DNA of 64,000 bases from Styela clava (taxonomy: Eukaryota): NCBI RefSeq assembly GCF_964204865.1, contig NC_135253.1, positions 5,208,001 to 5,272,000 on the forward strand, given 5' to 3'. Both the position numbers and the translations under genes were made by a program. Below, piece after piece: positions 12,848 to 57,500 of the stretch (position 1 is its first letter; the number at the start of each line of letters is the position of its first letter). The notes beneath the pieces were generated by a model. That model was not told the origin of the DNA. It did no database searches and saw only the letters and a list, made by a program, of their open reading frames with translations.

Positions 12848-13339
12848 ATGTCAGTGACGTTGCACACAGATCTTGGGGATATAAAAGTTGAACTTCATTG
12901 CGAACAAGCACCGAAGTCATGTGAAAATTTCCTAGCCTTATGTGCTAGTAACTATTATGATTCGTCTTTGTTTCATCGTAATATAAAAGGATTCATGATA
13001 CAGACTGGCGATCCCACAGGTACAGGGAAAGGTGGGACAAGTATATGGAATAGAAAATATGAAGATGAAATTTGCGAATCATTAAGACATAATAGTCGTG
13101 GTGTAATTTCAATGGCAAATAGTGGACCAAATACGAATGGATCACAATTTTTTATTACATATGGAAAACAACCACATTTAGACACAAAATACACAATCAT
13201 AGGTCGTATTATTGACGGACTTGAGATTCTGGACGACCTTGAAAAGCTTCCTGTGGAAGAGAAAACATACAGACCCATGACTGATGTTAGGATACAAAGA
13301 GTAACAATTCATGCTAATCCTATTGCTGATGCATGTTAA
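12848..13339 (+). CDS. PPIL3: Peptidyl-prolyl cis-trans isomerase-like 3 (cyclophilin), single coding exon, 163 aa
   Basis: MSVTLHTDLGDIK...CENFLALCASNYY..FHRNIKGFMIQTGDPTGTGKGG..SMANSGPNTNGSQFFITY..HANPIA is the recognisable PPIL3 sequence; splice acceptor ends at 12815; AATAAA at 13346 and 13607. Confidence 0.97.
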   Translation: MSVTLHTDLGDIKVELHCEQAPKSCENFLALCASNYYDSSLFHRNIKGFMIQTGDPTGTGKGGTSIWNRKYEDEICESLRHNSRGVISMANSGPNTNGSQFFITYGKQPHLDTKYTIIGRIIDGLEILDDLEKLPVEEKTYRPMTDVRIQRVTIHANPIADAC

Positions 13340-33200: not shown

Positions 33201-36200
33201 AGCGAATCAGGTATATGCGAGTATTTCCAATCCCTTTGCGTTGCAAAGCCTATACCAATTTAAATTTTGCTTTTGATGCTTTTGACATTACAATGACCCA
33301 ACAGCTAGCTTGGGCAAAGCGAACATCGCATATCATTAGATTAATAACCAAAATTTTTGAGCCTGCAACTACTGGAAAGTGGAAAGCCGATGTTGCGCAT
33401 CCCTAGTTTAGATAGAGCATGATCCATTTATATGCCAGGTGTCAGTTTTGACTTCTCAGTTCTCACCATACATTACATAACTATTGGGTCATGGCATATG
33501 TCCCAAACCACGCAGTTCACGCATCTGTCTGAAGTCAAAGGCTAAACATTAAAAGTCATCTTAATGGCTTTTTTGTTCAATAGGTATAAATATGAAATCT
33601 ATCATAATCGCATTACAATTCAAGTATAGAATCAAACCATGATCAAAATTACTAAAAATCATATTCAACTTCTGAATTGAAATTTAAAAGAAAATGTAAT
33701 TTTCCAGGACTTGATTTAGGATTAATCATTACAAAATTGTTTGAGAACTTGTTCAACAGTATAAGAAACACTTGATATATGAATACCTTTCTCGATGGTC
33801 ACACCAGGTATGAAATCCTCAACAGATCTCTGCACAACGTCAGCTGATGACATTTCTCACTTCTACCTCCTGACTAACACTTTCAGACTAATATTCAATA
33901 AATAGGACTGCTGAAATTGCCAAACTAAATTAATGTTATGAACAATTTATTGGATACAACTGTAAAAAGTGATAAAGTAAATTTACAAAAAACATGAATT
34001 AAATATAAATAAATATTTATGATAAAACTCATTTATCCTGTTCACAGGATTCATTTACGGTTTAGGCAGTACATTATTTATAGCCTATCTAAAGTTACCC
34101 TTTTCTTAAACAGTCAAATACATGTAAGCTTTCAGCAAATTTCATAAGGAAATGTACAAATAATCATTCTTTTACTTATTTACTAAACTGTAAAATGGAA
34201 AAATTTCTGTTTATAATATTATTAATAATAGTTATCATCTTTTCTATACTTCTTATCATCGTACATACGCAAGCATATTGCGCCAGTAAATCAGTCTCTA
34301 CCAAACCAAACTGCTCTATCTATATTCTGACAGTACTGAGTAATGACGCAGAAGCGGCGCATTCCTTTAGTGAGGTAAGGAATTAAATTCAGAAACAATT
34401 CCCATGTGTCTCAAATTGACTTTTTACAAAGCAGATATGCTGCAATCTCATGACAGACTACGTATGACATCACAAACAGAGAACAATTGTTGTTATCCTT
34501 CAAATTGTAGGCTACTATTTCTCTGATCAAATATAAGCTATAATGTCTTTCATATCTAAACATGTTTAAAATATCTATTTTTTTTAGAAGAAAAATAAAT
34601 AAATGACAAATTTTACTTTGACATAATGACGTTTCCATCAAAATAAATAATCTAATTCAACTTAGAAAGGGGTTAACTTAATTATATGAATTTTATGAAG
34701 ATTTAACAAAATTATTTAATTTAAAACCCAATTCTTGAACATCACTCGATTTAATGCCAAAAAAAATTAGAGCTGAAAATACAACAATAAGTTTGTATCA
34801 ATATAAAATGACGAAATTTGAGACTACTATAAATATAACTTCTATTGCAAACCATGTGACCTCCAACCCCTAAACTTGAAATCGAATGATTATTTTCTCT
34901 ACATAGACCAGGAATTACTTCAGCTAGCAGAAGACATCTTTGAAGGTGCTGAATTTTTCACTTTCTCACCCTGGAACATTTTATATGAGGTAACAAAAAT
35001 CTCACTCCTTGATAATTCCAGCTGCCTACTTCACAATTTATTTAGCCAAGTTATTACTTATCACACTAAAGAGCCTTGTGTTATCATTATTATATTTAGG
35101 ACAGTGGATATAATTATTGTGTTGGAGATGGTGAATGAAATAAAATTAATAGACTTCAAAATTGTTTGTTGATAGGAATACATATATATTGCTTCTGTCA
35201 ATGACTTGAAAATATCACCACAAAAAAATTCACTAGTTAGGCAACACATATGCACTAAAACGTCTATGTGTGTTAAAATTCACATGTTTATCCTGAGGGA
35301 GTTCTTGATCATATGGCGATAAAATTGGATTGGAATATGGAAAATGAATTAATTATCCCAATTGTTTAATAAATCACAATGTGAAGCAAGTATTTACTTC
35401 TATACATATTTAACGAAATTATTATATATTAATTATTATTATAAAATCATTTAGCATACGGTAAATGGAAATTGGTTAAAGACAGATAATAGGCTATGTC
35501 CTCCAATCATGAATAGATAAAATACACTGTGAGAAGGTTTACAATTTTATTATTATTCAATTTTATAAGGAATTTTTTTTCATTCTAATGAGAATTATAC
35601 CTACAAAGTTTCAAGTTTATGACACAATATTATTAAAAACAGACCATATTTTCTGAAATTTCATAGATAGTAAACAGAGTCAAATGGAAATACTTTGGGT
35701 CAAGTGTTATCTATTGATGAATTGAGCCATGCTATACTTGGAGATAGAATTGGAACAATAATTGATTGAGATAACTCAGAAGTATCATTCTACTCACTTC
35801 CTCCAACTCCACCAGTTTTGAGTGAGTTTCTATTCGAATTCATGCCTGTGCTATTGAAGTCCATGGGTGTTTGTGTGAGTGCTGCTACTCCAGGTCCTTT
35901 ATGGCGATTCAGAGATCGACCAGTTAAATCCGGCATGTTCTGTGGCATAAAAAATGAATTTTGCATTGGTGTTGTAAACTTGTAACATTATCATACCGCA
36001 TGGTCGAGTGGTTAATACAACTTTATGAAGCATTATGAGCAAGTATTTTATTGTTTTAATGTAGTCTTCAAAACGCCATTTGAGTGATGGTCTCTAGTGG
36101 CTACTATTGAGTAAATCTCAGACACAGTTGCTTGGACCATGAACTAAAGGTCAGATTCCATCCCCTTATGAAAAATGGGTGCTCCAGAAGTATGTGTACC

Positions 36201-39200
36201 AATATGGAGGTAACGAATTTTGTTTGCTTATTGTACATCAAGTTGTGTTCACTTGGCTAACACAAACAGTCCTCGGACTTGTAATAAAAATAAAATAAGG
36301 AAAATCAGAATAAAATTATGGCCTAACCATAAACTGGTACACATACTACGGGATTATCAAAAAATGTAACAACTGGGTAGGGTTTGACAGTAATGGAGAG
36401 TCAAAGTTGAGCATGTTTCTATTGATACTGTGGTCCGAGCTGTGGTTGGAAATTTGGACTCTCAATGGTGATGATTTCCAACATTAACTCCAAAGACAAT
36501 ATATTTTAAGGAATTAAATAATGCCAATACAGAGAAGTATTTGATAGGCTATCAATTTTTTTTTTCAGAGTTGAGGGCTGAAGTTTAAGTACAAAATTTA
36601 TTCAACCAACCTGAAGTCGAAGTCAATTTTTTTGGTCTAAAGAGAAGGGGGCTATAGTCGTTTTTGAAGTGGCTTTAAGTCTGGTGTAAATGTTTCTAAA
36701 CTTAGCAGCCAGAAGTTAGATCAATGTTACAAGAAATTTCAAACCTGGTGACTTCCTACAATTGCATTGCATTATGGGGTTAAAGAGTAAAACATCCATT
36801 TATTAATTGAAAGAATGTATAAAATACTCACTGAATTCAATTCAGAGTAATAATTGTTGATATATTCTACACCTTTCGCAATATCTCCCCTACACGCATG
36901 ATATGCTTTAGAAAGCAAGCCAATATTCTTTTCCCCAGTCAATTCTTTCAGTTGGTTGAAAAATGTTGTCCGTTTCTAAAACAATAATGAACAACGTTAT
37001 CGTTATTAATTTATTCAAGAAGATTGGCAACGGAAAACATCAAGGTTAGTGTGAAGGAGGTAAAATTATGTTTCCATTTTATTATTGTATTTAGACAAGA
37101 TATCAGAGTCCTGGGAATCACGATATAACCAGCGACGGTATAAGTTTGTATAGGATAAATATTCCTTGAATATATATTCATTAATTATGATCAAGGAATA
37201 GTTTGAATAGTATTGAATGAGGTATCCTAACAAAGTAATCCGATTATGTCCTATACAAAGCTAGGATATGATGAGATAAAATTATTCGAGAAGACAAGAC
37301 CCCATGACTGCATGAGATTAATACCAGTAATATTGAGTTATGATATAATTTTAAAAAACTCATAACTCAGCACATAAACATCTGGGTAATGAAGTTTGTC
37401 ATATCGCATTACAGCATTACAGGCCAGAATGAGGACAAACCAGCATTCTGGACTGCCACTTCAGCATTTGGTTCTGTCACTTGCTGACTCTAAATGCTTG
37501 CTCACACATAGATTCATTTATTTCTGATTTAACAGGTTGGCAGTGTGGCGCGTTGTGCTAAGCCAGGGGTCACCAAACTTTTTTGACCGCGGGCCGGGTA
37601 TGACTCAAATTGTGTTGAAACGGGCCGGATGAATATTTTTGTCAATGCAATACAATAAATTCACAAAAGTTGGGAATATCGCAGAACATAGATCGAGAAC
37701 AACCTAGGAAAACAAATTAACAAGATTTCTATATCTAGACAACTATCCTGAGGGTAGCTGTTATCAAAACGTTGCTGTCATGAATTAGAAATGTTACAAA
37801 ATCCGCGGCAAAAAATGTACGCATCACGTCTACCGTTACGCCGTGTTGAAATACCGCTCATAAAAACGACTGCCTGCTGTAGCTTGGAATTCTATGAAAT
37901 TTTGACATAATTTAGATAAAATAAACAACTATTATCTGGTATTTGAATTTTTTCAATAGCGCATAAATTTCCCAACATTCGACGCTTTTAAAAATTACGC
38001 TCCAGTTATACGTAGTGCAAATAATGATATTGTCTACGGACACCAATACAATTTATATGGACGTGTGTATTTCTTGTCTAACTTGATACTTACCAATTTT
38101 TATGAAGTTCGTACAATCAGAACATCGTTAATTATTACCCACAATGAACCACTGTCAAACTATCATGCACAACTCCAGCGTTTATTTGCGACGATCTTTC
38201 GGCGGTGTCAATGACCGTTGCCAGAATAAAATCCTGAAATAGTCTCAATATACCATAGATGTGACGCACATCGAAAGATTAGTGATTGATATGTGTTATT
38301 TTTCCATATTTAGTTCAGTTCTTATCAAAAAAGTAATAGGATCCTTATGGAAAAAATTGGCTGTCGGGCGGTACTAAAATTCCGATATCTCCGTTATTTC
38401 TTGACTGTTTATTCCAAACTTGGTATTGTTTTCTATTTTTACTCAAATCTTTCCACTGGAGCAGTTTTTATTTAAATCGGATGAACTTCAATTTTTTTGT
38501 AACATACCTACATGAATATCCGCATTAAAGCGGTACAAAAGTTAGTGTGGCTTTTGAAATTGGAGCAGTACGCGAGGGATTACAGTACTGTTAGCACAAA
38601 ATGCACATTCGACGTTTATTTTAGCACGAAAAACAAACAGTTTCGTCGAAAGCAAGCGCCACGAGTGTACAAGTGTATCGCAGAAAACGTTACGTACTGG
38701 TAGCATTCAAAGTCGCAAAAACGAAGTTTTGTTTACAACCACGACTGAAAATCTGTCAGAGTGACAAAAGTGTCTGAGCGGATGCGGAAAGGCCTATTAT
38801 TACGTCACTTTTCTGCATCTTGCCGATTGGCCAATGTTACAAAATAAACAAGGACGACGATGCTCGTGAAAATCTTCCTTGGAAAAAATTTAGCCATTTT
38901 TGCGTGTTATTGCGGACCGGATAAAATGACGCCGCGGGCCGGATAAAATGACGTCGCGGGCCGGATCCGGCCCGCGGGCCGTAGTTTGGTGACCCCTGTG
39001 CTAAGCGATAGGAATACGCACAGCACCGACCTTTGATTACTATAAATGGGTTCGCAGGCTCGAATCCCATGTGCAAGAGGATTGCTGGACTCCTCCACGC
39101 CCTACTGCCCCACAGCCCCAAGATGGTTCCTGTAATCCAGAAACCGCAGGTTAGTTACGGTACCTACCGCCTTCCCCCACCATTAAGTCCATGCATCTGA

Positions 39201-39435
39201 AAACAAATAACTGGCTAACTAATCCCATACCGTACGTACACAACGTGAACTGTCAACCGGACGAGGAAGTGGTTCGCCATATGCAGATACAGAGATAGGC
39301 TATGACTGTATGATTATCCCCGGGATAAATATGCAAATCCTATCTTATTCTAGCAGTTTACAACATCGCTAATTGGAAGATTGGCGAATAACTTGAATAA
39401 AATCATACTTTTTCTTCCTCTGGTGCGTTAGTCAT
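18252..39435 (-). CDS. USP25: Ubiquitin carboxyl-terminal hydrolase 25/28 family (UBA, UIM, USP catalytic domain, C-terminal domain)
   Basis: Hand-traced exons 5'->3': 39409-39435, 36832-36975 (UBA: [10 protein letters not shown]), 35798-35939, 32880-32991 (VIDLTG, UIM), 32592-32704, 31724-31869 (Cys box [19 protein letters not shown]), 30512-30646, 29692-29914 ([15 protein letters not shown]), 29045-29196, 28234-28361, 27700-27795, 27121-27228, 26589-26788, 25705-25827, 24943-25122 (His box [21 protein letters not shown] spans these two), 23740-23870, 23399-23459, 22872-23002, 21759-21878, 21020-21157, 20319-20540, 19538-19718, 18252-18444. All GT-AG with compatible phases. USP25 versus USP28 cannot be resolved (likely pro-orthologue) and the exact C-terminus is uncertain. 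Confidence 0.92.
19248..19335. mobile_element. Partial GGG-TIR TTAGGG-containing MITE
   Basis: ggtactcccgtagtgtgtgtaccaggttagggttaggccataattttattccgattttcc; the same family occurs at 47395-47462. Confidence 0.65.
22033..22337. mobile_element. hAT MITE, about 305-bp family
   Basis: Homologous to 48971-49276, 45095-45380 and 61009-61310. Confidence 0.75.
23981..24300 (-). mobile_element. tRNA-derived SINE, decayed copy
   Basis: Similar to the 30769-31058 family, with a gataggat tail; another decayed copy at about 26870-27100 (+). Confidence 0.6.
30236..30473. mobile_element. hAT MITE
   Basis: Ends CAGGGTTTCTCGAACT / AGTTTGACAACCACTG; related pieces at about 10610-10678 and 55414-55588. Confidence 0.6.
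30769..31058 (-). mobile_element. tRNA-derived SINE
   Basis: A-box-like head (tgtgctaagcgttagg), B-box-like ggttaaaatccc, body shared with 38999-39347, (ATCCT)n tail. Confidence 0.75.
33100..33405. mobile_element. hAT MITE with 8-bp TSD
   Basis: Flanked by GTTTAGAT (33092-33099, 33406-33413); degenerate TIRs and GGCCCGC subterminal motifs. Confidence 0.75.
33787..33853 (-). CDS. Candidate alternative first coding exon of USP25/28 ([22 protein letters not shown])
   Basis: Acceptor aatttcag gives exon start 33910; in-frame stops precede the ATG at 33853; donor AAG|gtattc is phase 1, matching the UIM exon at 32991. Confidence 0.45.
36177..36359. mobile_element. GGG-TIR MITE with 6-bp flanking duplication AAAAAT
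   Basis: gggtgctccagaagtatg ... catactacgggattatca, with internal ggcctaacc. Confidence 0.65.
37534..39347 (+). mobile_element. tRNA-derived SINE split by a hAT element (SINE parts 37534-37563 and 38999-39347)
   Basis: Removing the insert restores tggcgcgttgtgctaagcgataggaatacgc...ggctcgaatccc (A and B boxes), as in the 30.9-kb copy. Confidence 0.8.
37564..38998. mobile_element. Non-autonomous hAT element, 1435 bp
   Basis: Perfect 16-bp TIR CAGGGGTCACCAAACT and perfect 8-bp TSD TGCTAAGC (37556-37563, 38999-39006). Confidence 0.92.
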
Positions 39436-40000
39436 AACCGGAACTTAGAAGTCTTCAAAATTGACACCATTCCTCTCAGCACACACACTACTGCACTACC
39501 GCTCAAAAAACCCTATCCCTTGGTCGTGCTTGGGCTGCATCCGAGCTGCAAGGCGTCAGATCGATTCAGGACTTCGAAGTGGTGCCGGAGCCAGTTAGAA
39601 AAAATTGATTTTCAAAAATTTTGTTTCAGTCTTTATATTTATGTTGCAGGAAAAGAAAAAAATTGACAGGGATAATTTATGTTTATCGTTTTAATCGTTT
39701 GAGATTCTGAATTGTACTAAAGCATAACTGGTCGACGGATAGGAGAACTTTTCATTTTCCTTAGTCATAAAAATGTGTAGTATGTGTAGCGTATTTACAT
39801 TTCAGTAATATATAATTTAAAGGGTGGTTCGACAAAAGTTTGATAATTTCCGGGTTAGAAAAATAACACAATGTTACACTATAATTTTAATATTGTTAAA
39901 GATTTATATCTATTAAGGACATACTTCGTATATTTTTCGTATTTTAGATATATATACTTGTCCTCATTCAACTTACCAATTGTATGATGATAACAGGTTA

Positions 40001-40442
40001 TTGGACACGTTTAGTGGCCATAACGATCGTTTCAATATTATGTTGTTGTTGTTGTTGTTGTTGTTGTCGTTCTTTGACACGTTTTTAAAAAGTCGCTTTT
40101 CTCTTCGAATACTGGACCAATTGCTTTGAAATTTTCAGTGGTTAAAGATTAATTTTTTCGCTAGAAGGCTATTACTTTTATTTATTTCAAAATTTTGCGT
40201 GAATTCTATGAAATTTGATATTTCGTTCAAAATTTTGCTGTATTATTTTTTATCCATGGGAACACGGATTTTAGTCAGTGTCGTGACTGGCTGTACGTTT
40301 TGATTCTGCAAAATTCTTGCTACTGGAAATTCAGAACTTTTCTGAGGGTACCGGTACCGGTACCGGTAGCGTCAAAGGTACCGGTAAGGACTGATTCGCT
40401 CTGTTCTAACGTGTCCATATATTTGTGCGTAGCTCTCTTGTT
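40001..40442 (+). mobile_element. HINE-like element, family 2
   Basis: TT-GGACACGT ... (GTT)n ... ACGTGTCCA ... agctctcttgTT; core tcttcgaatactggaccaattgc shared with 41718-41943 and 50794-51036. Confidence 0.7.
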
Positions 40443-40844
40443 TTGGTTGGACTTGTAGTCTTCTCCGCCCCTACCGATTAAAGTTAATGATAATTTTTTT
40501 TTACTTTAAATTGTATTCGGAAATAATATCTCATTATCACAACTGGAACATGACACCGTAGTCATTTAACCGTAAATATATACTACTACGATTTAACGTC
40601 TCTGATTATTCTTGCTGAAGAAACCACAAAAGCGTATTTCCGCTACACAGGATCGGATTAAGCCCCTTTGGTGCCCTAAGCACTAAAGACTTTGATGCCC
40701 CCTCAGGTTGGCTCGGTTGAGCCCTAATCCTGAGGGAGTGTGACAATAAAGATTCGTGCCTCCAGTCTCAACGTGAATCAAAATACCAAAGGATACAAGT
40801 CACAACTGTAGTTTGAAATTTTACCGGTACCTAGTAGTTTACCT

Positions 40845-41617
40845 CAGGGTGGTGTAAGGTTGCTAGGTTGAATGACCGCAAAACTTTTGAGGAGGTCTCG
40901 CGGGCCGAAAGTCGGAGAAAACCCAAAAGTGATCGAAATATCGCGAGTTTGCTTACTTTAAAATTAATAAACAACGAGAGTTTACCGTTCTAATCAGACT
41001 ATTATTATGTTGCATTGGGGGCGTTCTTTTAAAGAATATATATAAAGCCTTCAGTTATTTTAAAGTTAATTCCCGAGAATGACCGTTGTATTTTGCGCAT
41101 CTCACGTTTAATGCAGCTTCAAATTATATTCTTTCGTGGCAGATATTACTTGAAATCAAACCAGACACTGTGTGATGGGCAAGGAAATACGTTTAGTTTC
41201 CGCCGTGTTTTCTTTATGTCACCCTTCTTGCGACACTCATTTTATTACGAATTGTTATATTGAGTAGTTTGAAAACTTGCAGCGTGAGCAAGCTTAGTGC
41301 CATCGTCAAATACCAACCAAGTCCGTCTAAGTTGGTATTTCGGGACCTTGCTAAAGAAAAATGGATTGCGCGGCGTTAAGTCGGCTCTGCGTTTCGTCAC
41401 TACTGTCACGTGGCCGACGCTTAAAAACAGAGCAGTGATTTTACTAAAATAAAGGTACAAAGCGTTAGAAAAAAGGGGTTGAATCTCGGGATCCTAACCC
41501 CAGTTGGAATAGCTAAAAAACACTCAAAAACGTTCCTCCATTAGATACAAATATACGCTAAAATTGTTCTGTGAGCCGCACGGAATGTATCAGCATGACA
41601 GGGTTTGGGCCACCCTG
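40845..41617. mobile_element. Nested hAT MITE
   Basis: CAGGGTGG...CCACCCTG ends; TSD GTTTACCT / GTCTACCT. Confidence 0.75.
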
Positions 41618-41717
41618 GTCTACCTTATCAAAAAACTCCCGACTACGCTGACCACTAGATCGTTGAAATGCGATCATGGAACCGCCACATAGTGTAAATA
41701 GTTCATTGGTCCAATTG

Positions 41718-41943
41718 TTGGACACGTAGTGGACATAACGATCGTTTCAATATTATGTTGTTCCTGTTGTTTGACACAAAATAACACACCTAGTGGAAAT
41801 ATTAAAAAAACGCTTTTCTCTTCGAATACTGGACCAATTGCTTTGAAATTTTCAGTGGTTGAAGATAAAATATTTCCCCAGAAGGTAAACCGTACCGTAC
41901 TGCGAACAGACGTGTTCATATATTTGGGCGTAACTCTCTTGTT
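41718..41943 (+). mobile_element. HINE-like element, family 2 (nested)
   Basis: Same termini and core as 40001-40442. Confidence 0.7.
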
Positions 41944-43483
41944 GAAAATAAAAGAATTTTTTTAAAACAAAAATGCAGCAACAAGGAAAATGCTAGAAAG
42001 AAAAAACAACAACAATTCAAGAAAACGACTCATAGGCCCATTTCGTGTCAAATAAATGGGTTTCAGTGTTTATTTTTAATAAAGAAGGTTAATATGATAC
42101 TTGGAGACGAAAAATAAGCGAACATTTTGAAGTTTGAGTCGTCTGGTGAACTCGTAATATTTTAATAAACACCGATAAACTATATAAAATTCTGCTCTAA
42201 AATTTCTGTGGTGTCCCTCTTTGCTTGATGCCCTATGCACGTGCTTATATTGTTTAATGGTTAATCCGGCGCTGTCGCTACATTTAGTTCGGCGTTCTTG
42301 CCTCTATCCCGCTTTGATTTAAATGCATCGCAGCTTGCTTGACTTGCCTATTTGTTTACACTTTACAACTTGACTGGACTCTGAATCTAATCCTCTAACT
42401 TACCATAAAAATAGCCTGTGACTCAGCCAATACCAACAGAGACAAAACCAAGTGGCTTTAACTGTACTTTTATTGAACAATACGGATTCTGGCCTCATAA
42501 AATAGAAAGCAGCTTTTAGTAATGAAGAATTGTAAGTTAAAGTAAACATGTAAGTGGCATGAACAGATCCCATTCAAAATAGGGCTGTGCAAAATCAGAA
42601 ACCTCACGCTTCATACGACTGCATCAAAAGGGAAATCATCAAAGCAATTATACGATTTAGAAATTCAGACTAGCAATTACAAAAATCAGATTAATTTGAT
42701 AGAAATATCAACAATGGATAGGGCGCAAAAAATAGGTTAATTATCCAACTTCAAAACAGTTGAGCATCATGGAATTGACTTAAACCAAATTTGTACTATG
42801 TTTTGATACGATACAGTTTCATAAATCACGCAGTGAAAAGATTTATAACTGTGAATATTAGAGAATGTTCCCATCATAATTACGTAGATATACTACTGCA
42901 ATTCCTCACTATTCAATGTGAAAACACTTTTATACACAATATTTAAAGTTGAGAATGGTACACATATCGTGCTATATGTAAACTTACAATTTAGAACTAT
43001 ACTAAACTGTTTCGATAAATAAAATAATAATTTTTAGTATCACATTAAAATAAATATAACACACAAAGTCACCGGCATTGCTCATTTACATATTATATTA
43101 AATCAACTGACCACTCTAGCCCATTATGTACCGACATCTCTATTCCAGGAATAAGTCGAAACAAAGGGATCACGCTTGGAACGGAGTCAGTGGTTTTCTG
43201 TAGGTGGGCGGAGTGGTTTTAAGATTCAAAAAAGCAGATGCAGTGAGTCGATGATCAAAAAATGCAACGAATGTCAACTATATATAATAATATTAAATTC
43301 TAATAAAGAAAATAGAGAAAGAAAAGTCTGTAAACAGCGTAAAATATGTGGCATTGATCAACTGGGGTTAATTGACGATATATATATTCAAGTTCTTAGA
43401 AAATCAAAAGTTGATGAATAGGCAGAGCGAATGATACTGCATAATAAACCACCAATGTTGTTATGATGTATTCGTCGTTGCCC

Positions 43484-43570
43484 TCACCATGGTTGAGCCT
43501 TCAAAATCACTCTGGATTTGGGAGTGTAACGAGTGTATCCGAAAACATCCTCGTGAAGATACAATCCCAT
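43484..43570 (-). CDS. NOS: Candidate alternative (distal) terminal exon of NOS: MGLYLHEDVFGYTRYTPKSRVILKAQPW*
   Basis: Strong acceptor ttttgttatttttacag, phase 0; HEDVFG lies at the same offset from the acceptor as HEDIFG in the proximal exon; downstream AATAAA at 42469-42474. Confidence 0.75.
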   Translation of the reverse strand: MGLYLHEDVFGYTRYTPKSRVILKAQPW

Positions 43571-45094
43571 CTGTAAAAATAACAAAAATATACATAACTA
43601 CAATTATCAAAACGAAAGGGAAATGAGGAAACCCTTCTCAAACTTTGTACTGCAGCATTCCTACTGAAATATTTGTCAATCCGGGCATCAGGGGTAACAG
43701 AATTTTCAGATTTTTCATACTTTTTCAAGCAGAAACATTTTTTTATGAATATAAAAAAACACGATGACTTCCCCAATATGCAGAAAAATCATCGGATTTT
43801 AAGAATTTTAGTTAACTTTTAACATAAAACGTTGAAATGATACTAAAGAGAATAGAATTAAGTGGTACAAGCAGAACGTTCGTATTTGTGATCGAACAAT
43901 CGATTGAAATAAAATATATAACATAGAAGCATCCGATGTTAGTGTAAAGTAGATTGCGATGTATGAAACATTTTATTCAACAATATACTAACTAATGTTT
44001 GTGATATTCCATATGGTTGGAAAGAATTGAACTATTATTATAGAAAAATATTTTGCAAGTAAAAAACGTTCTCAATACATCGAATTCCGACTCGCAGTCA
44101 AAATGCGCTGCCCAAGTTTCCGAACATGACTCACGCAAATAACCATTCAATAAATTTCACCAACAAAACAGACAAATACAAACGGAAAAGTTCGTACCAA
44201 ACGAAGAAACAAATATGCTTGAATGCAACAATACATGAACGTAATAATAAACAAACACATATCTGGTAAACAGCATCTCAACAGAACATTTAAATGTAAG
44301 AAATTACTGTCTATTGTTATATGTATGCATTCGCTTGGAACATGCAAATTACATGACACGTCGAATCTAAGACCAACGAATAGATAGTTCACAATGGTCA
44401 TTGATACCGCCATAACGCTTTCCGCTTAATGTTAAATAAAATAGGACAACGGTTCCAAACTTTTTGTTCGTGCGCGTTCAGGGAAAAAACTAATGGCGCA
44501 CTTACACGAAAAAAATTGCAGCCTATAAAAATCCAATTTTGAGATCGTTAATGTGTACTTTATTCCTTTTATAGTTTGTAAACATGTAGGCCTAGCCTAG
44601 AGAATATAGGCTAAACAGCAACTTTTTTTCTTCATCTATGTATTATTTTCCTTTGACAAAAATCACTCATGTTCGCTGAACTCGGTTCCGCATTTAAATT
44701 TTCGGGGCGTACCAGTGGGAACCGCTGGGATAGGATTCATATATTTAACCTGTGGGAAATTTTTTTTAAATGTAGGCGAACCATACAGTAAACCATACAT
44801 ACAGCCCGTTCAGTATTCCAAGTAGGTAATGAAAATAGGCCTCTTGTATGTAAATATTCCCACGGAAATCGAACATGCGGATATTCATTAACATTGCTAA
44901 GGAAAGTCGTAATCGCTCTAATGTGAAAGTCAATAAATATGCGAAAGAACAAATCAATATAAGATTAATTAAGCAGAATGTGTGGAAAAAGAAGTATTAA
45001 AAAGCAAATTATTTCTACTACCCGATTGGGTATATTAAACTTACTACAATAGAAAGAAGTGTAGAAGATAGGTCTTGGGCAAAAGAGGGTTTAA

Positions 45095-45380
45095 AGCCAG
45101 GGGCCAAAAAATTTGCCCACTCAGACTGGCGGGCCACGTAAGTGTGACGTAAAAAGTTTCATTTTATGAACAATATTTACAGTGTTACAAAAGCAAAGTG
45201 GAAAACGATAAGCCTCGTGCCAAAACAAAATTTAATCATAATCTCAACAAATTGCTTGGGCTATTTTTGGCTAAAACATCAAAATTTGCCTTTGGTTTGA
45301 TTGTGGCAGCATCTGGTGGGCCAGATTGAAGTACCCAACGGACCAGATTTGACCCGCGGGCCGTAGTTCGCCCATGTCAG
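45095..45380. mobile_element. hAT MITE, 305-bp family, in the putative NOS proximal 3' UTR
   Basis: Inverted homologue of 48971-49276. Confidence 0.75.
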
Positions 45381-45564
45381 GTTTAAAGACATTGTGTCTT
45401 CATAGCGTTAAAGGTTATAATCGAGCTGTTTGCATCGCACGTTATTTGTAATTTTGTGAAGTGATTAGATAATTACACTAGCACAATCACATGCATGTTG
45501 ATCTATTTCTATTGCTTAATAATTATATTCTATGTCCATTGCTTCCATGCAACTTCTTACGCTT

Positions 45565-48500
45565 TTATTTCTTTTTCGAAGTGACGTGGCGCTGACGCAC
45601 GCTCTTGTTTACTTCGTACGTCCTCAAGGTGACGCCAAAAATATCCTCATGATATAAACCTTGCTCCTGAACATCAATAATACTTCGAAATATCGCATTT
45701 TTTTTTCACAAAATTATAAAACAAAGGTTAAATGAAGGTTAAAGAGTAAGTATAACTCGAATCCAACTGGTAGTTGAGAAGATCATCTTTAAGTCTCGTT
45801 GTTGTGGGTTTTACATTGCTAAAGTCGGAAGGCAGCTCATATTCAGGTACATATTGTGGGCACAATCCAGGGTACTCCCGTAGTATGTGAACTAAGATGG
45901 CGGACACCGGAACGTAGTATGTGTACCAGGTTAGGGTTAGGCCATAATTTTATTCTACAGGAGTACCCAATCAAGTGCACCCCCATGCCTTACACACTCT
46001 GTCAGTGATGATCTTTGACCCTACCATTTTATGTGTTTTGCAAATGTTTATAGCAAACAGATTTTCCATATGGGAAAACTAGATTAGCTTATCCAAATAC
46101 ATCATTTAGTGAAGGGTACCAACATGGTCGTCATTTGCCACATGAAATGTTGAAAATCCGAATAAACATACGGTATCTCACCTTCATTTTAGTCACATGT
46201 TCTCTAGCTTCCTTTTTGCTAATGTTTGCTTTCTTTTCCAAAACTTCCATTAGTGCATTGTTGACGTCATCAGCCATTGTGACGTCACCACATATGTAGA
46301 CGTGTCCGCTGTTCTTTAAAAGCCAGTCGTATGCTAGATCAGCTAATTGTTCTTTCAAAACATGCTGAACATATTGCTGTAAACAAGAAAATATTTTATC
46401 ATTTTATTTACAAGCCATTAACGGCCTAAAAAACGCCGGGATGCACTAAAAACATAATATGATAACCTTGGCGCAATGGTCTAGCATTGTCAGAGACTTT
46501 GCCACACATGTATCGTAAATTGAATTCATTATATACATGCGTAGTAACAAGTATATTGAGTATTATTTTTTACGTAGATTGTCAAAAACCAAACCAACTT
46601 TAGGTTGTCCCGGAAGTCTCGAAAAAGCCGTATGGTATTCAGTGATAGCTCCACAATTCTTAGCCTCCTGTATTTCATCCTTATATAAATGATCTCGATC
46701 TGGGTGACGACAACCGAAAAGTAAAGCAACTTCTCCGACTTGTTTTCCTGCAAAAATATTAGATTTTTGAGTTATATAATCCAGACAGTTAGTTATTCAG
46801 ATGATTTATTTAATTTATTGCAAAAGTTTAACTGAAAGATTGATTAAATGGCAAACTTTACCTTGTTTAATGTCGTACATCCTTTGTTGCCAGAAACTTC
46901 TGAATGGAGCGATTCCTGTTCCCGGACCAATCAATAAACATGGGGCAGAAGAATTTTTCGGAAGATGGAAGCTTGTGGCTCTGCAAAAGACAGAATATAG
47001 AACATAAATCTACTAGGACCACATCATGAATAATGTTATCAGAATAACACTTACGGCCTTATAAAGCAGCAAATATCCGATCCAAGTTCCATTCTATTCA
47101 AATAAGACGAACATACACCGTGACGTTTTGTTCCCGATCCCCCTGAGATGTGATAGAATGACATTTATTTCACTGAAAATCAGCTTTTAAGACTCTTCGA
47201 CTATTCTAGCGTTTAAACAGTCAACTACGAATTTCTTCTCTTGCAGTTGTGGTTTTTGAATTCGACGATGACGTCAAAATATTAAACTACATCTCTAACC
47301 GATATTTTTAATGTTTATCAAAGAATTAATAACATGCTTTGAAAGAACAAATTTTATCCATTCTTGTCCAATCCACATTTGTTGGACATTTTGGGGTACT
47401 CCCGTAGTTAGGGTAGGCCATAATTTTTTCCCGATTTTCCTTATTTTAGTTCTATTACGAGTTTTTAAGCTCTTTCTGTATTTGATAATACAGTCAATAC
47501 AGTAATACATACAATTTTTCTTACCTTGGGTATTGTAGCTAACAATAGCAACTGTGCAATGAACTTCGTTTGGATATACATCAGTAGAACTACTTATTGA
47601 ATAATATCTACATTGCAAAGGACTGAGTTGACTCAAGAGAAGAGATGCTTCTACTCGCACCGAAGGAAATTCCGCTAAAACTTCTGCCAAGTTTGGAAGA
47701 AAATGAAACTTCCATTCTTCGTATTCGGACTTTCCCTGAATTATAATTAAAAAGGTTGTTATGTAGCAATCAGAGAAGCGTGGTTCATAGAAAATATTTT
47801 ATTTTCGCGGACATAGGTTACCTAATTAGAATGAAATGAAGTAAATGAGCATAGATCACAATGAAGTAACAAGCTAATTGTGGGAAAAGTGTGGAACAAG
47901 TGTGGTAAAAGCGGGAAAAGTGTGGAACAAGTTGAAGCAGTGCGGAAAAACTGGAGTGCGGAACGAGTCAGAAAGATGTAGAACAGTTAGAAGTTTGTTA
48001 ACAAGTGGGAGGAATGTGAAACAAGTTGTAGAAGTCTGGTACAAGTGTGAAACAAATGGGAGAAATGTAGAACAAGTGTGTTAAAGTGTGGCACAACATT
48101 TTTGAGACATTCATTCTGAAGCACTCACAATTAAATTTTAAACTAGCAAATAGTTGTGTACACGTTGTCCACCATTCAACGTTGCAGTTGATAAATATAC
48201 ACGTATATTTGACGCTCTTAGAAAACGCTTTTTTTAAAACCATACAAAACTGTACATTTGTGTGAATAATACTATACCAGGTATGTGTATTAAGTTTGCT
48301 ACATCAGGCATATTTTGTGATAGTGAGGTAAATATACATGTTCATACACTCCACGAAAATGCACTAAATTTATACTGCAATGTATAATGAGGATATACAT
48401 GGCTAACTGTTATTACATAATAGATAAATACCCAATGTGTATCCCAGGCAAAAAATAGGCTATATTCGATTACGTAGTCCGATTAAATATTCAAGCGAAC

Positions 48501-51500
48501 TATTGCGCATTGGATTACCAGTCCAAGTCGAGGTTACATGTTCAAGATGGATTTGTGTGGTGATATTTTGTCATGAATACTGATGCAAGCTTTCTGAAAG
48601 AAGAGTCTCTACTCGCTCCACTTGTACTACACTTATCGCACTTGCACCACGCTAGAAACACTAGTACCACCACACATGCATCAATTTTCTGGGTTGGGAT
48701 ATATATTAAATCTTGGATGATTGGTTAGTGATGAACATATAGAAGTGGTTTCATGGTAAGTACCGGTTTAGGACAGATATAATACTCAACTTTTTGTTTA
48801 AATGTACCAAACAATTTTTTTTTGTGTGTGGGGGGGGGGGCCAAGGTTTATTAGACTAATACGTTGCGTTCTATCATTTATTTGTTATTAAAAACTTTAA
48901 ATCGCCCATGTCGTGCAAGAGGTAATCATCATCATATCACCAAGCACTAAAACGGTATATTAGTCTAGCTCAGACATAGGCAAAGTACTGCCCGCGGACC
49001 ATCTCTGGCCCGTTGGGTAATTCAATCTGACCCGCCTGATGCTGTCACAACCAAACTTAAATCAAATTTTTATGTTTTAGCTAAAAATAGCTCAAACATT
49101 TTGTTGAGATTGCGTTTAAATTTCGATTTGGGCACGAGACTATTGTTTTCCATCTTTGCTTTGTAACACTGAAAATATTGTTCATAATATTTAACTTTTA
49201 CGTTACACTTACATGGTCCGCCAGACTAGGTGGGCAAAATTTTTGGCCCCTGGTTCAAAAACCTTGCTCCCTCCTGGTCTAGCTGGTGCTATACAATGTG
49301 TCATAGAATACTTGATCACAGAAAGCAAGTCACACAAAATTGACACACAAAATTTATCACTCACATCTCCACTATTCTGTGTAAAGTCAGCAGAAAGGAG
49401 GACGCAGCAATATGAACTTAAAAATTTTCTTCAATTAAACAAACGAATGGTAAACCTTTACCATTATATACAACACCAGCTTTTTAAGGTTTGAATAAAT
49501 ACTTGCAATGATATAACAATAAAGCATAGGCATAATAATTTAATTATTAATTATACCTTATTATGCACATGCTTTCCAGACATGTGTTTGTGCTAAGAGT
49601 AGATAGGAGATTTGTATGTAAATATTATATTCGGTGGCCTGACAAAAGGCGCGTACGAATTTGAGGTTCAAAGTACCAATCCGGCAACAATTAGGTGAGG
49701 ATTACGTTTTATGTTTAAGATAATCCTTTGGCGAAACCTCATTTTCGAATATCTGTATATGTATCGATTGATCAGATTTGAAAAATATAATCCGGATACT
49801 ATGATGAACTCGGTACGTTCAATAACTTGATTGATTCAAGAACTATTAGTTTGAACTATTGTTCGTATGAAAAAGAAAAAATTCCAACCTCTGAAAGCTC
49901 TAGCAGTCTTGCTTTCTCTTTGTCATCTGCAGCGCAATCGGCAAATATTTTCAATAGTTGTGGAGTAGGACAAGTTGTAATGTCGAAATAACGCTCGAAT
50001 GCAGTTCTCAATGTACAGGCAGGAAGACGTTTGTCTGGCAGCCAGTTGCTAATAACACCTGAAAAGAGATGAAAAAATTCCGAATATTTTCAACAATTTA
50101 ATATTTACAACCTTGAACTGATGCAGTAATAAACAATGAAAATTCATAGGAGTTACTCAAACATGGTTACGAACCCTAACTCAAAATAGAAAAACTATCA
50201 CTGTTAGTGTTTAAGTGACACTATTTGCTATTGAAGAATCGGTGATGGCCCAGTGGTTAAATCTTAAACACATCACTCAGTGTGTAATCAATTGGGTAGA
50301 CGATGCCGAACCGGAAAGATTTCGGTTCCTCAAAAAATAAGGTAGCTCCCCACATATCATATCAGTAACAGAATGTGCGTAGCCTTGTTAAGTGCAAAAA
50401 GCGTTTAACTGCGCGTCGTATAAAAAAAATAAAATAAACATTTCTAGCAAATTGTTACCAAGAGGCGTCGTTCGTTGTTCAAATATCTGTAGTTGAATCA
50501 ATGCTTTTTCATCCACTTTATCGTGAAGTCTCTCTAGAATCCCTGAGAAGATTAACAATAAAATAAGCACAAATATGGTAAACTTTTTCATTGAAATATA
50601 AATAGTTTAGCAATATAACATACGGTCAACAATTTCAGTTTGGTTACAGGGGTATATTCCGATGTGATCGCCTGGTAGATATTTGATTTCAGAAGAACTT
50701 GAAGAATCGAATTCAACAAGGATGGTGCCGCGACTGAAAAAGAAAATATCGTATAAATAGTGTTATCAATTAATAAATAAACTTTAGTCTTTTTTGGACA
50801 CGTTTAGTGGACATAACGATCGTTTCAAAATTTTGTTGTTATTGTTATTTGTCTCCATCATTTTTAAAAAATCGCTTTTCTCTTCGAATACTGGACCAAT
50901 TGCTTGGAAATTTTCAGTGGTTGAAGATAAAATTTTTCTTCAGAAGGCTATTACTTTTTTTTCGCTATGACGTCATCAAAATTATTGCCATTGGGTGGCG
51001 CTACGTGCCCATATATTTGAGCATAGCTCTCTTGTTTCGGTATATAAATACATTGCATTCAGCAGTTTAATAAGAACCAACTTGGTCCGGTAATCTAAAT
51101 AGTCTTCTGGTACAAGTTGGGACCAGAATCGTTAGCAATCTATGCCCGATCTATCATAGTTGTAGTAGTGTATACCTCATGTCAACTAACTATATAGGGC
51201 TGGGCATTTTTGAATACCCTGTGATTTCAGAATCGAATCGAATAATTTTTTCGAATCGAATCGAATCTCGAATACTTGGGACAATATAATTGTAAGCGAC
51301 TTTTCTAGAGTAATAGGTCCTCTTGCCACAGAATTATTGAAGACATAGAATACATCACTCAGTTGGATTACTGAGCGTTCACACACAATAACAAACACGT
51401 TTTATCAATAACTCAGTACAGAAATAATGTTATACGTTAGAATTGCGTTAAAAAATTATGACTTCAATGAACAAAAAATGAGGAATTCACCTAGATCATT

Positions 51501-54500: not shown

Positions 54501-57500
54501 AGTTTGCAAAAATCAAAACACAAACAATTATTTTTCACTCAATTGGTCACTGACGTACGGAGCGGTGGAAGAGCGTTTGAGAAGTCGTTGCATTCGTGGT
54601 TTCCTGGTTAATTAAATATCTTTTGACATTAAATACGGTTGAGAAAAATAGGCCAAGGTTTTTTCCTAAGAGAGAAAAGCCGATAACATTATTACATGAC
54701 CCATTCCTATGAAAAGTAATGACTTCTGGCCCGTTAGAGCATTTTAGCAAGGACTAAGACTATTGTAGTGATAGCAAACTACAGATGTTGAATGATAATA
54801 TTAAAAATAAATGGTGGGTCAACTATACAGTCTAAGAAAATCGTTTTATTTACCTCATACAGTATATGAAATATCTGATGTGCAACTAAATATATTTATC
54901 AAATAACTTACTGGCTTTCTTCTGGTTTTGATAGCTCCACTAGTGTCTGGCCTAGATTCTGAAATAAAAAATAATATTGTTACAAAAGCTGCAATAAATA
55001 AAAAATTAGTAATAGGTTTTGAACAAAATTTTAATTTTTTCAAAATCTAAACCTATATCTTGATACTATGCCACGTTCTTGTGCAATATTCCCCCATATC
55101 ATAGTTTTGGTATTTATGCTGGAAAATCAACATAAAACTAACCAATTTCAATATTGATGCTTCCACAACAGTTTTGATCTCATATACTAACTTGGAATGA
55201 ATATTTTCTTATAATATGAGCGATTTTTACGAATTATAAATAAAAATATTCAAACTTTTGTAACTTACTACTCCATTTTCAGGGGGATCCCCGTTTCCAA
55301 AAGTACTTGTGACAACCAACAAAAGAGTTTCATGTTCCAAGTGTACAATATCATAATCGTCCATGCAGACAACCTATTAGAAAAAAAAGTTTGAGTCTTT
55401 GTAACAACTGGGCCAGGGTTCCTCAAACTGTCTTGCTGTATTACTTGTCTTTTTATTTATTTAATGGGTTGCATTGATTAAATCCCCAATGAAGATGCGT
55501 TAAAATTGGGTATTTTTATTGAAAAGCAGGGGACATGTGTTGAAAGTATTTGCGGGCGGATGGTATCATGAGGATTTGAGAACCACTAAACTACACGTTT
55601 GTCAATTTTTCCAAGTGTAGGTGATATAGACAAGTTTTCACTTATGCCAAGTTTTTACTGATTATTGAGAGAGAATTTGAGGATTTGTCAAGTCTCTAAT
55701 ATCAAACCGGACTACAAAATATCTACAGGATAGGGACGCCGCGTAAGAAAATACATTTATTAGGATACGTCAAAAAGTTTGCCAACAAAATTTTCAATGT
55801 TTCAACGTATTTAATGAGCAATTTGTAATTTAACTCAACCCCGGAGTAAACTTGTTTTGGTACTCCTGAAGTATGCGCACCAAGATGTCGCATAACCTGA
55901 ACCCTAACCTGGTACACAACCTGAGTTCAGGTTGTGCGCCATCTTGGTGCGCATACTTCAGGAGGTCCCTTGTTTTAATAAAATTAAAATTCATATTGCA
56001 GTTTTTAGTATAATAATTAAGGATTATTTCTCTGCATTAATGTTCCATTTAAAAAAAAATCCAATTTCAATTATCAGAATTTTCGAAAAAAGCTTTTTTT
56101 TATTGAATCACAAATGTATCCAATTTTGAAGAACTAAATTATTTATACATTTTCAGCCTTCTCTACAAGTGGAATGTCCATTTCCGCATCAAAGACTTAA
56201 ATGGAGACTTTCTAAATTGATTTTACACTGACCATAAAGGAATTTCGAATAACAAAGCGGTTTTCACGGCCCACATGGCGCAATCCCCATTCCAACTATT
56301 CTAATCTTGGTTTTATATATTCAGATAGATACCTTTGCAGCAAAAGCATGGTTGAAAATGTCACACAAAGTCTTCGCATATTCCAATGATTTTCCTGTTT
56401 CAGAAGCATACAAAATTGTTGCTTTCACACGATTCGCCATTGCCTTTCCCATCATGGATGACATAATTAGCACGGACCTGAAATAAGTATCAAGAAAATG
56501 TATCATAACTGGAGTATATGGAAATATTGAATAGTAACAGATATTACGAGTCACGAAATAGTTTCGAACGAGTATAAACATGGCGCATTTATTTCAATTT
56601 TAGTTATATTACGAGTTCGGGGACTAGCCAGATGACTCCCGTAGTATTTGTTCCTTCGGGAGTACCAGTTATTCAATATGCAGTTTAGCGAATTTTGTTT
56701 CCGATTTCTTATCATTGGGAATTTAAAAAATATCAGTGAATTCGAGTACACATCAAATATTAATATGCAATTTTATACCGTATAAGTTGCATGGACATTG
56801 CACACAATACACATATCATATCACATATTGCAAGGTCATACGCACTAACTCAGAAGTAAAGGAGACTCATCTTCGAGTAAGATTGCGAGCGACAACTAAT
56901 ATGCCAAGAGATACTGAAACTACAAATGTACGGAACAGCTTTGCATCTAATTAAAATGAAAAACAGCAAATAAAAAGACACTTTTGGGTATTTCTTCCAT
57001 ACCTAATTTAAAAAAAAAATCTTCGAGCTTCGAGGTGAATTTTAAATGTTAATCTGTTTACATAGCAGTACGACATATGTTCCCAATCAAAGATAAATTT
57101 GAAAGGTATTTTTATTAAAACGACTCACTTTGCAAGCTCTTTGAATCTGATGGCTTTCTTTACTTTGTTGACTTTTCCCTTCCACACATGATATTTCCAT
57201 GGATCAGGCTATAAAAATTATCACATTTATATACGTGCCATATAAGGCAAAACATACACGGTGAGATCGTGCTTAGCATATACACAGCTGGTTCATACTT
57301 CGAAGTATATTTGGAATAAGGCATAATATTTTCATTCCCGTTTTTTTATGAACTTATGAGATCAATTCGTACCTGTATAACACGCTAAACCGGTAACCGG
57401 TAAAATTGTGTTGTCTGCTTATAAGATAACTTTCATTTAACCATTGCATGCCGCGTGCTTGCAAGACGCTTATATGTTGATTCCGAACAATTTCTATGCA

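What the first reader, a model, noticed from the sequence alone, without database searches (positions are those of the whole stretch)
43484..45666. NOS with a duplicated alternative last exon: a possible splice/polyadenylation switch of the regulatory C-terminal tail
Seen: after the penultimate exon (donor at 46182, phase 0) there are two phase-0 terminal exons. The proximal exon 45565-45666 encodes [33 protein letters not shown], with AATAAA at 43972-43977. The distal exon 43484-43570 encodes MGLYLHEDVFGYTRYTPKSRVILKAQPW*, with a strong acceptor and AATAAA at 42469-42474. HED[I/V]FG sits at the same offset in both. The distal frame is too short to appear in the ORF track. Established: this exon supplies the catalytic Asp and FAD-shielding Phe (rat nNOS D1393/F1395), and the tail restrains electron flow through R1400 and an Akt site (S1412; eNOS S1177); iNOS has a shorter tail lacking both. 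The proximal tail keeps the Arg at +5 from Phe and an RxRxxT motif (RQRHVT), while the distal tail keeps Asp/Phe but loses both. Inference: one gene could make a constitutive-type and a de-repressed, iNOS-like reductase by terminal exon choice, a difference that vertebrates encode in separate genes.
Basis: partly seen in the sequence, partly recalled or inferred. Interest (0 to 1): 0.9.

Follow-up and report, generated by a model that had tools for sequence, protein, structure and literature searches.

The report
Duplicated last exon in NOS gene
The only nitric oxide synthase gene of this (probably sea-squirt) genome has, 2 kb past its normal last coding exon, a second intact, splice-ready copy of that exon with a different regulatory tail. 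The sequence suggests selection has kept it, but whether it is actually spliced in could not be tested here.

Summary
On the minus strand the NOS penultimate exon ends at 46182 (phase 0, AAG|GTGAGA). It is followed by the canonical last exon (45666-45565, aligns to rat nNOS 1388-1413) and by a second phase-0 mini-exon (43570-43484) that repeats the GLY..HED[I/V]FG.T..T core.

- **Not chance.** The six-residue motif occurs only at these two places in all six frames of the window and in none of 300 shuffles.
- **Splice-ready.** The distal acceptor is the best of 181 other AG sites in the 4.2 kb after the donor.
- **Selection.** Synonymous sites between the two copies are saturated (pS 0.8) while the amino acids are kept (pN 0.1-0.3).
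- **Coding-like.** GC content and codon usage resemble the gene's exons.
- **Context.** The genome has one NOS locus, and the distal exon is unique DNA with no other NOS exon remnant beside it.

I read it as an old tandem duplication of the terminal coding exon, probably an alternative tail (confidence 0.58).

Use in transcripts, conservation in relatives and the proposed "iNOS-like, de-repressed" enzymology remain untested.

First readers flagged tandem alternative last exons in other genes of this genome (unchecked). This NOS feature was not found on other DNA.

The parts
46182..46376 (-). NOS penultimate coding exon (65 codons, phase 0 at both ends); the donor AAG|GTGAGA follows at 46181
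45565..45666 (-). Proximal, canonical terminal coding exon (33 codons + TAA). It carries HEDIFG, Arg at Phe+5 and RQRHVT (RxRxxT).
   Evidence: aligns to rat nNOS 1388-1413 (1tll_A, 8t1j_A); family-profile E 1.6e-12
45553..45560 (-). Donor-like GTAAGAAG starting 4 nt after the proximal stop. It ranks 3rd of 247 GT sites, so the proximal exon could be a stop-bearing cassette exon.
43571..43592 (-). Distal acceptor: T-rich tract plus CAG, 10.75 bits on the gene's own acceptor matrix. It ranks 2nd of 182 AGs, behind only the proximal site, and beats 15 of 16 known acceptors scored leave-one-out.
43484..43570 (-). Distal duplicate terminal exon (28 codons + TGA). It carries GLY-L-HEDVFG-Y-T, then a divergent 15-residue tail with Arg at Phe+4 and a Thr-Pro, and no RxRxxS/T.
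45231..45236 (-). ATTAAA, 328 nt after the proximal stop
44559..44564 (-). AATAAA, 1.0 kb after the proximal stop
43972..43977 (-). AATAAA, 1.6 kb after the proximal stop and about 400 nt before the distal acceptor
42469..42474 (-). AATAAA, 1.0 kb after the distal stop; the first canonical signal after the distal exon

Best explanation
The terminal coding exon of this genome's single NOS gene was duplicated in tandem long ago, and both copies are still coding. The penultimate exon (donor at 46182, phase 0) can join either the proximal exon or, by skipping it, the distal exon at 43570. The proximal exon gives the canonical tail: Phe shield, Arg at +5, and an AGC-kinase-type RxRxxT site. The distal exon keeps the catalytic Asp and the FAD-stacking Phe but replaces the regulatory tail with a different 15-residue sequence. 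The result would be two reductase C-termini from one gene. Shown here: homology, phase compatibility, acceptor strength, the selection signature, uniqueness in the genome, and a single NOS locus. Inferred: that the junction 46182>43570 is made, whether the choice is a competition with the proximal poly(A) sites or skipping of a stop-bearing cassette exon, and any change in electron-transfer control.
For: The motif occurs only at the two exons and in 0 of 300 shuffles. The distal frame is the 2nd-best match in the window to an independent NOS C-terminus profile. The distal acceptor scores 10.75 bits, the best of 181 non-proximal AGs in 4.2 kb and better than 15 of 16 known acceptors of the gene. 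It lies exactly 15 nt before the HED codons, as in the proximal exon. Over the 15-codon core, pS is 0.80 (saturated) against pN 0.29; over 11 codons the values are 0.88 and 0.11. The chance of keeping 10 of 15 residues with 18 randomly placed nucleotide differences is 6.5e-5. GC is 0.44 in the exon against 0.29 and 0.33 in the flanks, with a known-exon mean of 0.416. Codon log-odds are +9.7 bits in frame against -7.2 and -5.7 out of frame. That is 0.31 bits per codon, equal to the best known exons, p 0.024 against 7261 stop-free null windows. There is one NOS locus in 377 Mb. No second penultimate-exon remnant and no other NOS-like piece lies below 45565. The distal exon with 700 bp of context is unique DNA, not repeat cargo. 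No intron-less junction precedes it, so it is not a retrocopy.
Against: There is no comparative evidence: no close relative turned up in any searchable collection. Only 8-15 codons are alignable, and the family profile alone gives E 0.11. The distal tail lacks the VTL[RK]T.EV segment present in most of the 15 NOS tails sampled, and it has Leu rather than Tyr directly before HED. The tail-only codon statistic is weak: p 0.024 with a narrow null and 0.10 with a broad one. The position-class Fisher test is only p 0.054. The exon was found through its amino-acid similarity, so the selection test carries ascertainment bias.
Confidence: 0.58

Rival explanations
1. Relic exon. The distal copy was once a used duplicate, or the last surviving exon of a lost tandem NOS paralogue. 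It is no longer spliced and looks intact only because too little time has passed for decay.
For: No transcript or cross-species support could be obtained. The tail beyond HEDVFG.T is unlike any of 15 NOS tails sampled. A 28-codon open frame can survive by chance. The tail-only codon signal is weak.
Against: The acceptor is the best non-proximal AG in 4.2 kb and sits at the homologous position. A neutral relic old enough to saturate synonymous sites should also have lost the motif and the acceptor. No other decayed NOS exon lies nearby. GC and codon usage are exon-like.
Confidence: 0.28
2. Separate transcription unit. The strong acceptor followed at once by ATG could be an SL trans-splice site, or an exon of an unannotated downstream or antisense-independent transcript. 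The NOS-like peptide would then not be attached to NOS.
For: The exon begins CAG|ATG. Other first readers report SL trans-splicing in this genome (unchecked). The best named PPIL3 matches are Ciona and Clavelina, so this is a lineage with trans-splicing.
Against: A free 28-residue peptide made of the FAD-shielding strand has no plausible role. No other coding exon or gene was recognisable in 30000-43400 on either strand. Selection on HEDVFG makes sense only as part of a diflavin reductase.
Confidence: 0.05
3. Chance resemblance in AT-rich non-coding DNA.
For: The family profile alone gives E 0.11 for the window, and the core is short.
Against: There were 0 motif hits in 300 shuffles. The hit is on the same strand, 2 kb downstream, in the same phase, at the best acceptor, with GLY before and T..T after the motif, and with exon-like composition.
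Confidence: 0.03

Closest known systems
C-terminal tail of constitutive NOS (rat nNOS 1388-1429; structures 1TLL and 8T1J)
   Same: The proximal exon aligns residue for residue over Y1390-V1404, with D1393, F1395 and R1400 in place. An RxRxxT lies 2 residues from the S1412 position. The roles of F1395, R1400, S1412 and the tail are reviewed in PMC6451115.
   Different: The proximal tail is 11 residues shorter than in nNOS. The distal exon keeps only HEDVFG.T, has Arg at +4 and no AGC-kinase motif, and finds no solved structure at E <= 10.
Inducible NOS (iNOS/NOS2) short tail, encoded in vertebrates by a separate gene
   Same: Like iNOS (from my own knowledge of the human sequence, not tested here), the distal tail keeps Asp and Phe, lacks the Arg at +5 and the Akt-type serine, and contains a proline soon after FG.
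   Different: No sequence relationship to iNOS tails was shown. The difference here would arise by exon choice within one gene. Calmodulin independence in iNOS also depends on loss of the FMN-domain autoinhibitory loop, which a tail swap does not remove.
Tandem duplicated exon substitution and homologous alternative last exons (e.g. KRAS 4A/4B; surveys PMC9741552 and PMC4494069, listed and not read in full)
   Same: Two homologous exons lie in tandem on one strand, in the same phase, and would be used one at a time to give isoforms identical except for a homologous segment. The duplication is old, with saturated synonymous sites.
   Different: Mutually exclusive use is unproven here. This concerns the terminal exon of NOS, for which my literature searches found no report.
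Naturally short-tailed NOS genes (e.g. P0012, Notodromas monacha, 1279 aa, 6 residues after HEDIFG)
   Same: It shows that a NOS reductase can exist with a very short, non-canonical tail after the Phe shield.
   Different: That is the only tail of a separate gene in a crustacean, not an alternative exon.

Membership tests
NOS / diflavin-reductase C-terminal strand | Conserved Asp and FAD-stacking aromatic in [YH]-x-D-[IV]-[FW]-[GS] at the C-terminal end of the NADPH domain | tested here: met
   Both exons carry HED[IV]FG. The proximal one aligns to nNOS D1393/F1395. The distal one is the 2nd-best frame in the window for a NOS-tail profile.
Constitutive-type NOS tail | Arg at Phe+5 (R1400) and a basic-directed Ser/Thr site (S1412-like) | tested here: met
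   For the proximal exon: R at +5, and RQRHVT two residues from the S1412 position. For the distal exon: not met (R at +4, no RxRxxS/T).
iNOS-type tail | Sequence relationship to vertebrate iNOS tails, and loss of tail-mediated repression | not tested
No iNOS tail was aligned here; the resemblance is from memory only. Enzymology cannot be done with these tools.
Tandem duplicated alternative (terminal) exons | Two homologous exons in tandem, same strand, same phase, each with a usable acceptor | tested here: met
Tandem duplicated alternative (terminal) exons | Each terminal exon has its own stop and a downstream poly(A) signal | tested here: met
   Stops at 45567-45565 and 43486-43484. Hexamers at 45236, 44564 and 43977 after the proximal stop, and at 42474 after the distal stop. 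This is sequence-level evidence only.
Tandem duplicated alternative (terminal) exons | Both junctions observed in transcripts, used one at a time | not testable with these tools
No transcript-derived fragment of this species appeared in the protein collections.
Tandem duplicated alternative (terminal) exons | Both copies conserved in related species | not testable with these tools
   The closest NOS fragment found is 57% identical and covers one upstream exon only (P0173). The metagenome scan gave only a bacterial FNR.

The most novel reading that the evidence does not exclude
In an invertebrate chordate with a single NOS gene, choice between two ancient homologous terminal exons would switch the enzyme between two forms. 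One carries an nNOS/eNOS-type tail (NADPH lock through Arg at +5, plus an AGC-kinase site). The other lacks both, is less restrained, and instead offers a Thr-Pro site. That would be one-gene splicing doing what vertebrates divided between constitutive and inducible NOS genes. It might also explain how ascidians run both neuronal/metamorphic and haemocyte immune NO production from one gene.
Probability: 0.22. Interest if true: 0.75.

Novelty: new variant of a known kind. Interest (0 to 1): 0.5.

Why it matters
The NOS C-terminal tail is an established brake on electron flow, and it is one of the features separating constitutive from inducible NOS (PMC6451115).

Tunicates are reported to have one NOS gene, yet they use NO in larval nervous-system signalling, metamorphosis and haemocyte immunity (PMC10342570, PMC8999111). 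Those papers also note that invertebrate NOS regulation is little studied.

A swappable tail exon would be a simple, directly testable way to obtain differently regulated enzymes from one gene. It would also provide a natural pair of tail variants on an identical catalytic body for enzymology.

If the exon turns out to be unused, the locus is just a well-preserved relic of an exon duplication.

Tried and rejected
- **Protein collection, penultimate exon.** The search for homologous proteins returned nothing. The tool only sees proteins of 36-113 aa for this query.
- **Protein representatives, penultimate exon.** 331 hits, best identity about 50%, no close relative. Of the 13 hits that reach the C-terminus, none has a distal-type tail.
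- **Protein collection, 167-aa frame around exon 47735-47525.** The closest hit is an unnamed Logan genomic fragment, 57% identical, covering that exon only.
- **Metagenome scan.** It returned one bacterial ferredoxin-NADP reductase contig, which is irrelevant.
- **Solved structures, distal peptide.** Nothing at E <= 10.
- **Own-genome searches with either terminal exon.** Each finds only itself.
- **Repeat search, 42400-46400.** No flank similarity between the two exons. The short direct and inverted repeats, including one pair linking the donor-side intron to the distal acceptor region, are within chance expectation.
- **Rfam, 40000-48000.** Nothing.
- **Recalled Ciona spliced-leader pattern.** Not enriched in this genome: 2 hits against 3 control hits.
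- **Left out under the operators' rule.** No search, fold or complex prediction was run on a joined penultimate+distal (or penultimate+proximal) product. Exons were searched one by one, by reference.
- **Rejected readings.** A retrocopy, because an acceptor and not cDNA-contiguous sequence precedes the exon. Transposon cargo, because the DNA is unique.
Full report
**What is there**

The minus strand of the window carries most of a nitric oxide synthase gene. tblastn with four full-length NOS proteins lays exons from 63365 down to 45565, and the 5' end lies beyond the window.

The penultimate exon is 46376-46182, 65 codons, phase 0 at both ends. It ends in AAG|GTGAGA.

It aligns without gaps to rat nNOS 1388-1413 in 1TLL and 8T1J.

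A second frame at 43570-43484 also translates as written. It is preceded by a T-rich tract and CAG. HED[IV]FG occupies residues 6-11 of both exons.

There are two more between the proximal stop and the distal exon: ATTAAA at 45236 and AATAAA at 44564.

**Is it more than chance?**

- HED[IV]FG occurs only at these two places in all six frames of the 64 kb, and never in 300 block shuffles.
- I built a profile from the C-termini of 15 NOS proteins of other species and scored all 3591 stop-to-stop frames of the window. The proximal frame ranks first (E 1.6e-12) and the distal frame second (E 0.11). Taken alone that E-value is marginal.
- The hit also lies on the right strand, 2 kb downstream of the real terminal exon and in the right phase.

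**Splice competence**

I built a position matrix from the gene's 16 recognisable acceptors.

- The distal site scores 10.75 bits.
- In leave-one-out scoring only one of the 16 known sites does better.
- Among the 182 AG dinucleotides in the 4.2 kb after the 46182 donor, it is second only to the proximal acceptor. The next decoy scores 8.84.
- The AG sits 15 nt before the HED codons in both exons, so the intron position is retained.

**Selection**

The flanks of the two exons share no nucleotide similarity. Within the core the differences sit mostly at third positions:

| Core | pS | pN |
|---|---|---|
| 15 aligned codons | 0.80 (saturated) | 0.29 |
| GLY/HEDxFG/xT block (11 codons) | 0.88 | 0.11 |

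If the 18 observed nucleotide differences are placed at random, 10 of 15 residues are kept in only 6.5e-5 of trials.

There are caveats. The core is short, a plain position-class Fisher test gives p 0.054, and the exon was discovered through its peptide, which biases the test. Even so, a copy old enough to saturate synonymous sites would not keep the catalytic motif and the acceptor unless it had been translated for most of that time.

**Composition**

- The distal exon has 44% GC, against 29% and 33% in its flanks. Known exons average 41.6%.
- Its codon log-odds are positive only in the proposed frame: +9.7 bits against -7.2 and -5.7.
- With the proximal exon removed from training and a 40-kb null, it scores 0.31 bits per codon, as high as the best known exons (p 0.024).
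- The 16 tail codons alone are not significant (p 0.10).

**Context**

- All seven matches to the NO_synthase oxygenase domain in the 377-Mb assembly lie in this one locus.
- Searches with two exons agree on a single locus.
- No remnant of a second penultimate exon or any other NOS piece lies near the distal exon. There is therefore no trace of a decayed tandem paralogue.
- The distal exon with 700 bp of context is unique in the genome.
- It is preceded by an acceptor and not by cDNA-contiguous sequence, so it is neither transposon cargo nor a retrocopy.
- No other gene is recognisable downstream at 30000-43400.
- The intronless PPIL3 gene at 12848-13339 is closest, among named proteins, to Ciona (80%) and Clavelina (75-76%). 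This fits the tunicate assignment made by other first readers. It is weak evidence, and a recalled Ciona spliced-leader pattern was not enriched.

**Mechanism**

The best reading is an old tandem duplication of the terminal coding exon, with both copies able to accept the phase-0 donor at 46182. Two routes to the distal tail are open.

- **Cassette skipping.** AGC|GTAAGA lies 4 nt after the proximal stop and ranks third of 247 GT sites. The proximal exon may therefore be a 106-nt stop-bearing cassette that is normally spliced on to 43570, which would make the distal exon 3' UTR. Skipping the cassette would then expose the distal reading frame.

I cannot tell these apart without transcripts.

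**What the two tails would do**

This part is inference. It rests on the established roles of the Phe shield, Arg1400, Ser1412 and the tail (PMC6451115).

- The proximal tail keeps Arg at +5 and an AGC-kinase consensus.
- The distal tail keeps Asp and Phe, has Arg at +4, a Thr-Pro, a proline that would break the tail helix, and no RxRxxS/T.
- The distal tail also has Leu rather than Tyr directly before HED. One sampled NOS (Elysia) has Ile there.
- Both tails are short: 22 and 17 residues after FG, against 33 in rat nNOS.
- A less restrained reductase is plausible but unproven. A tail swap would not remove the FMN-domain autoinhibitory element.

**What could not be done**

- The protein collections hold no close relative and no transcript fragment of this species for the exons tried.
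- The metagenome scan returned only a bacterial reductase.

**Comparison with what is known, and verdict**

Tandem duplicated exons used one at a time, including homologous alternative last exons, are a known kind (PMC9741552 and PMC4494069, seen). My searches found no report of alternative C-terminal tail exons in any NOS. The ascidian NOS papers describe one neuronal-type gene without C-terminal isoforms.

The exon is very probably a real, selected duplicate. Its present use (0.58) and especially its proposed enzymology (about 0.2) await transcripts, relatives and assays.

Noticed in passing
window 45553-45561 (-): A good 5' splice-site match (AGC|GTAAGAAG) begins 4 nt after the proximal stop codon and ranks 3rd of 247 GT sites. 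The 'terminal' exon may also work as a 106-nt stop-bearing cassette exon spliced on to the distal exon.
   Followed up: partly
window 43482-43490 (-): The distal stop codon TGA lies inside ATG|GTGAGG, a donor-like sequence that is weak on the gene's own matrix. The two next good acceptors downstream (43327, 43299) would both complete TG+A into a stop again.
   Followed up: partly
window 46145-46161 and 43792-43808: A 17-nt inverted repeat (82% complementary) links the intron just after the 46182 donor with a site about 220 nt before the distal acceptor. The position is suggestive for looping out the proximal exon, but the match is within what chance gives in 4 kb.
   Followed up: no
window 45100-45400 and 61095-61391; 41729-41965 and 50794-51070; 45843-45986, 55830-56013 and 63049-63204: Three interspersed repeat families recur in NOS introns and in the stretch between the two terminal exons. 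ORFs share the same peptides, and one family contains cctaaccctaacc.
   Followed up: no
window 12848-13339 (+): An intronless, complete PPIL3 (cyclophilin-like 3) gene of 163 aa. The best named matches are Ciona intestinalis (80%) and Clavelina lepadiformis (75-76%), and two unnamed Logan proteins reach 87-88%. This is the best clue here that the genome is an ascidian other than Ciona.
   Followed up: partly
L002 43-1722 (G000 C19, about 16439304-16440983, +): An intronless 559-aa ORF with an FNR-like FAD/NADPH module ending GRYKEDVWT, a long low-complexity N-terminus and no FMN domain. It could be a diflavin-reductase-derived retrogene or an MTRR/NDOR-like relative.
   Followed up: no
About four such pairs are expected by chance in this stretch.
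   Followed up: partly
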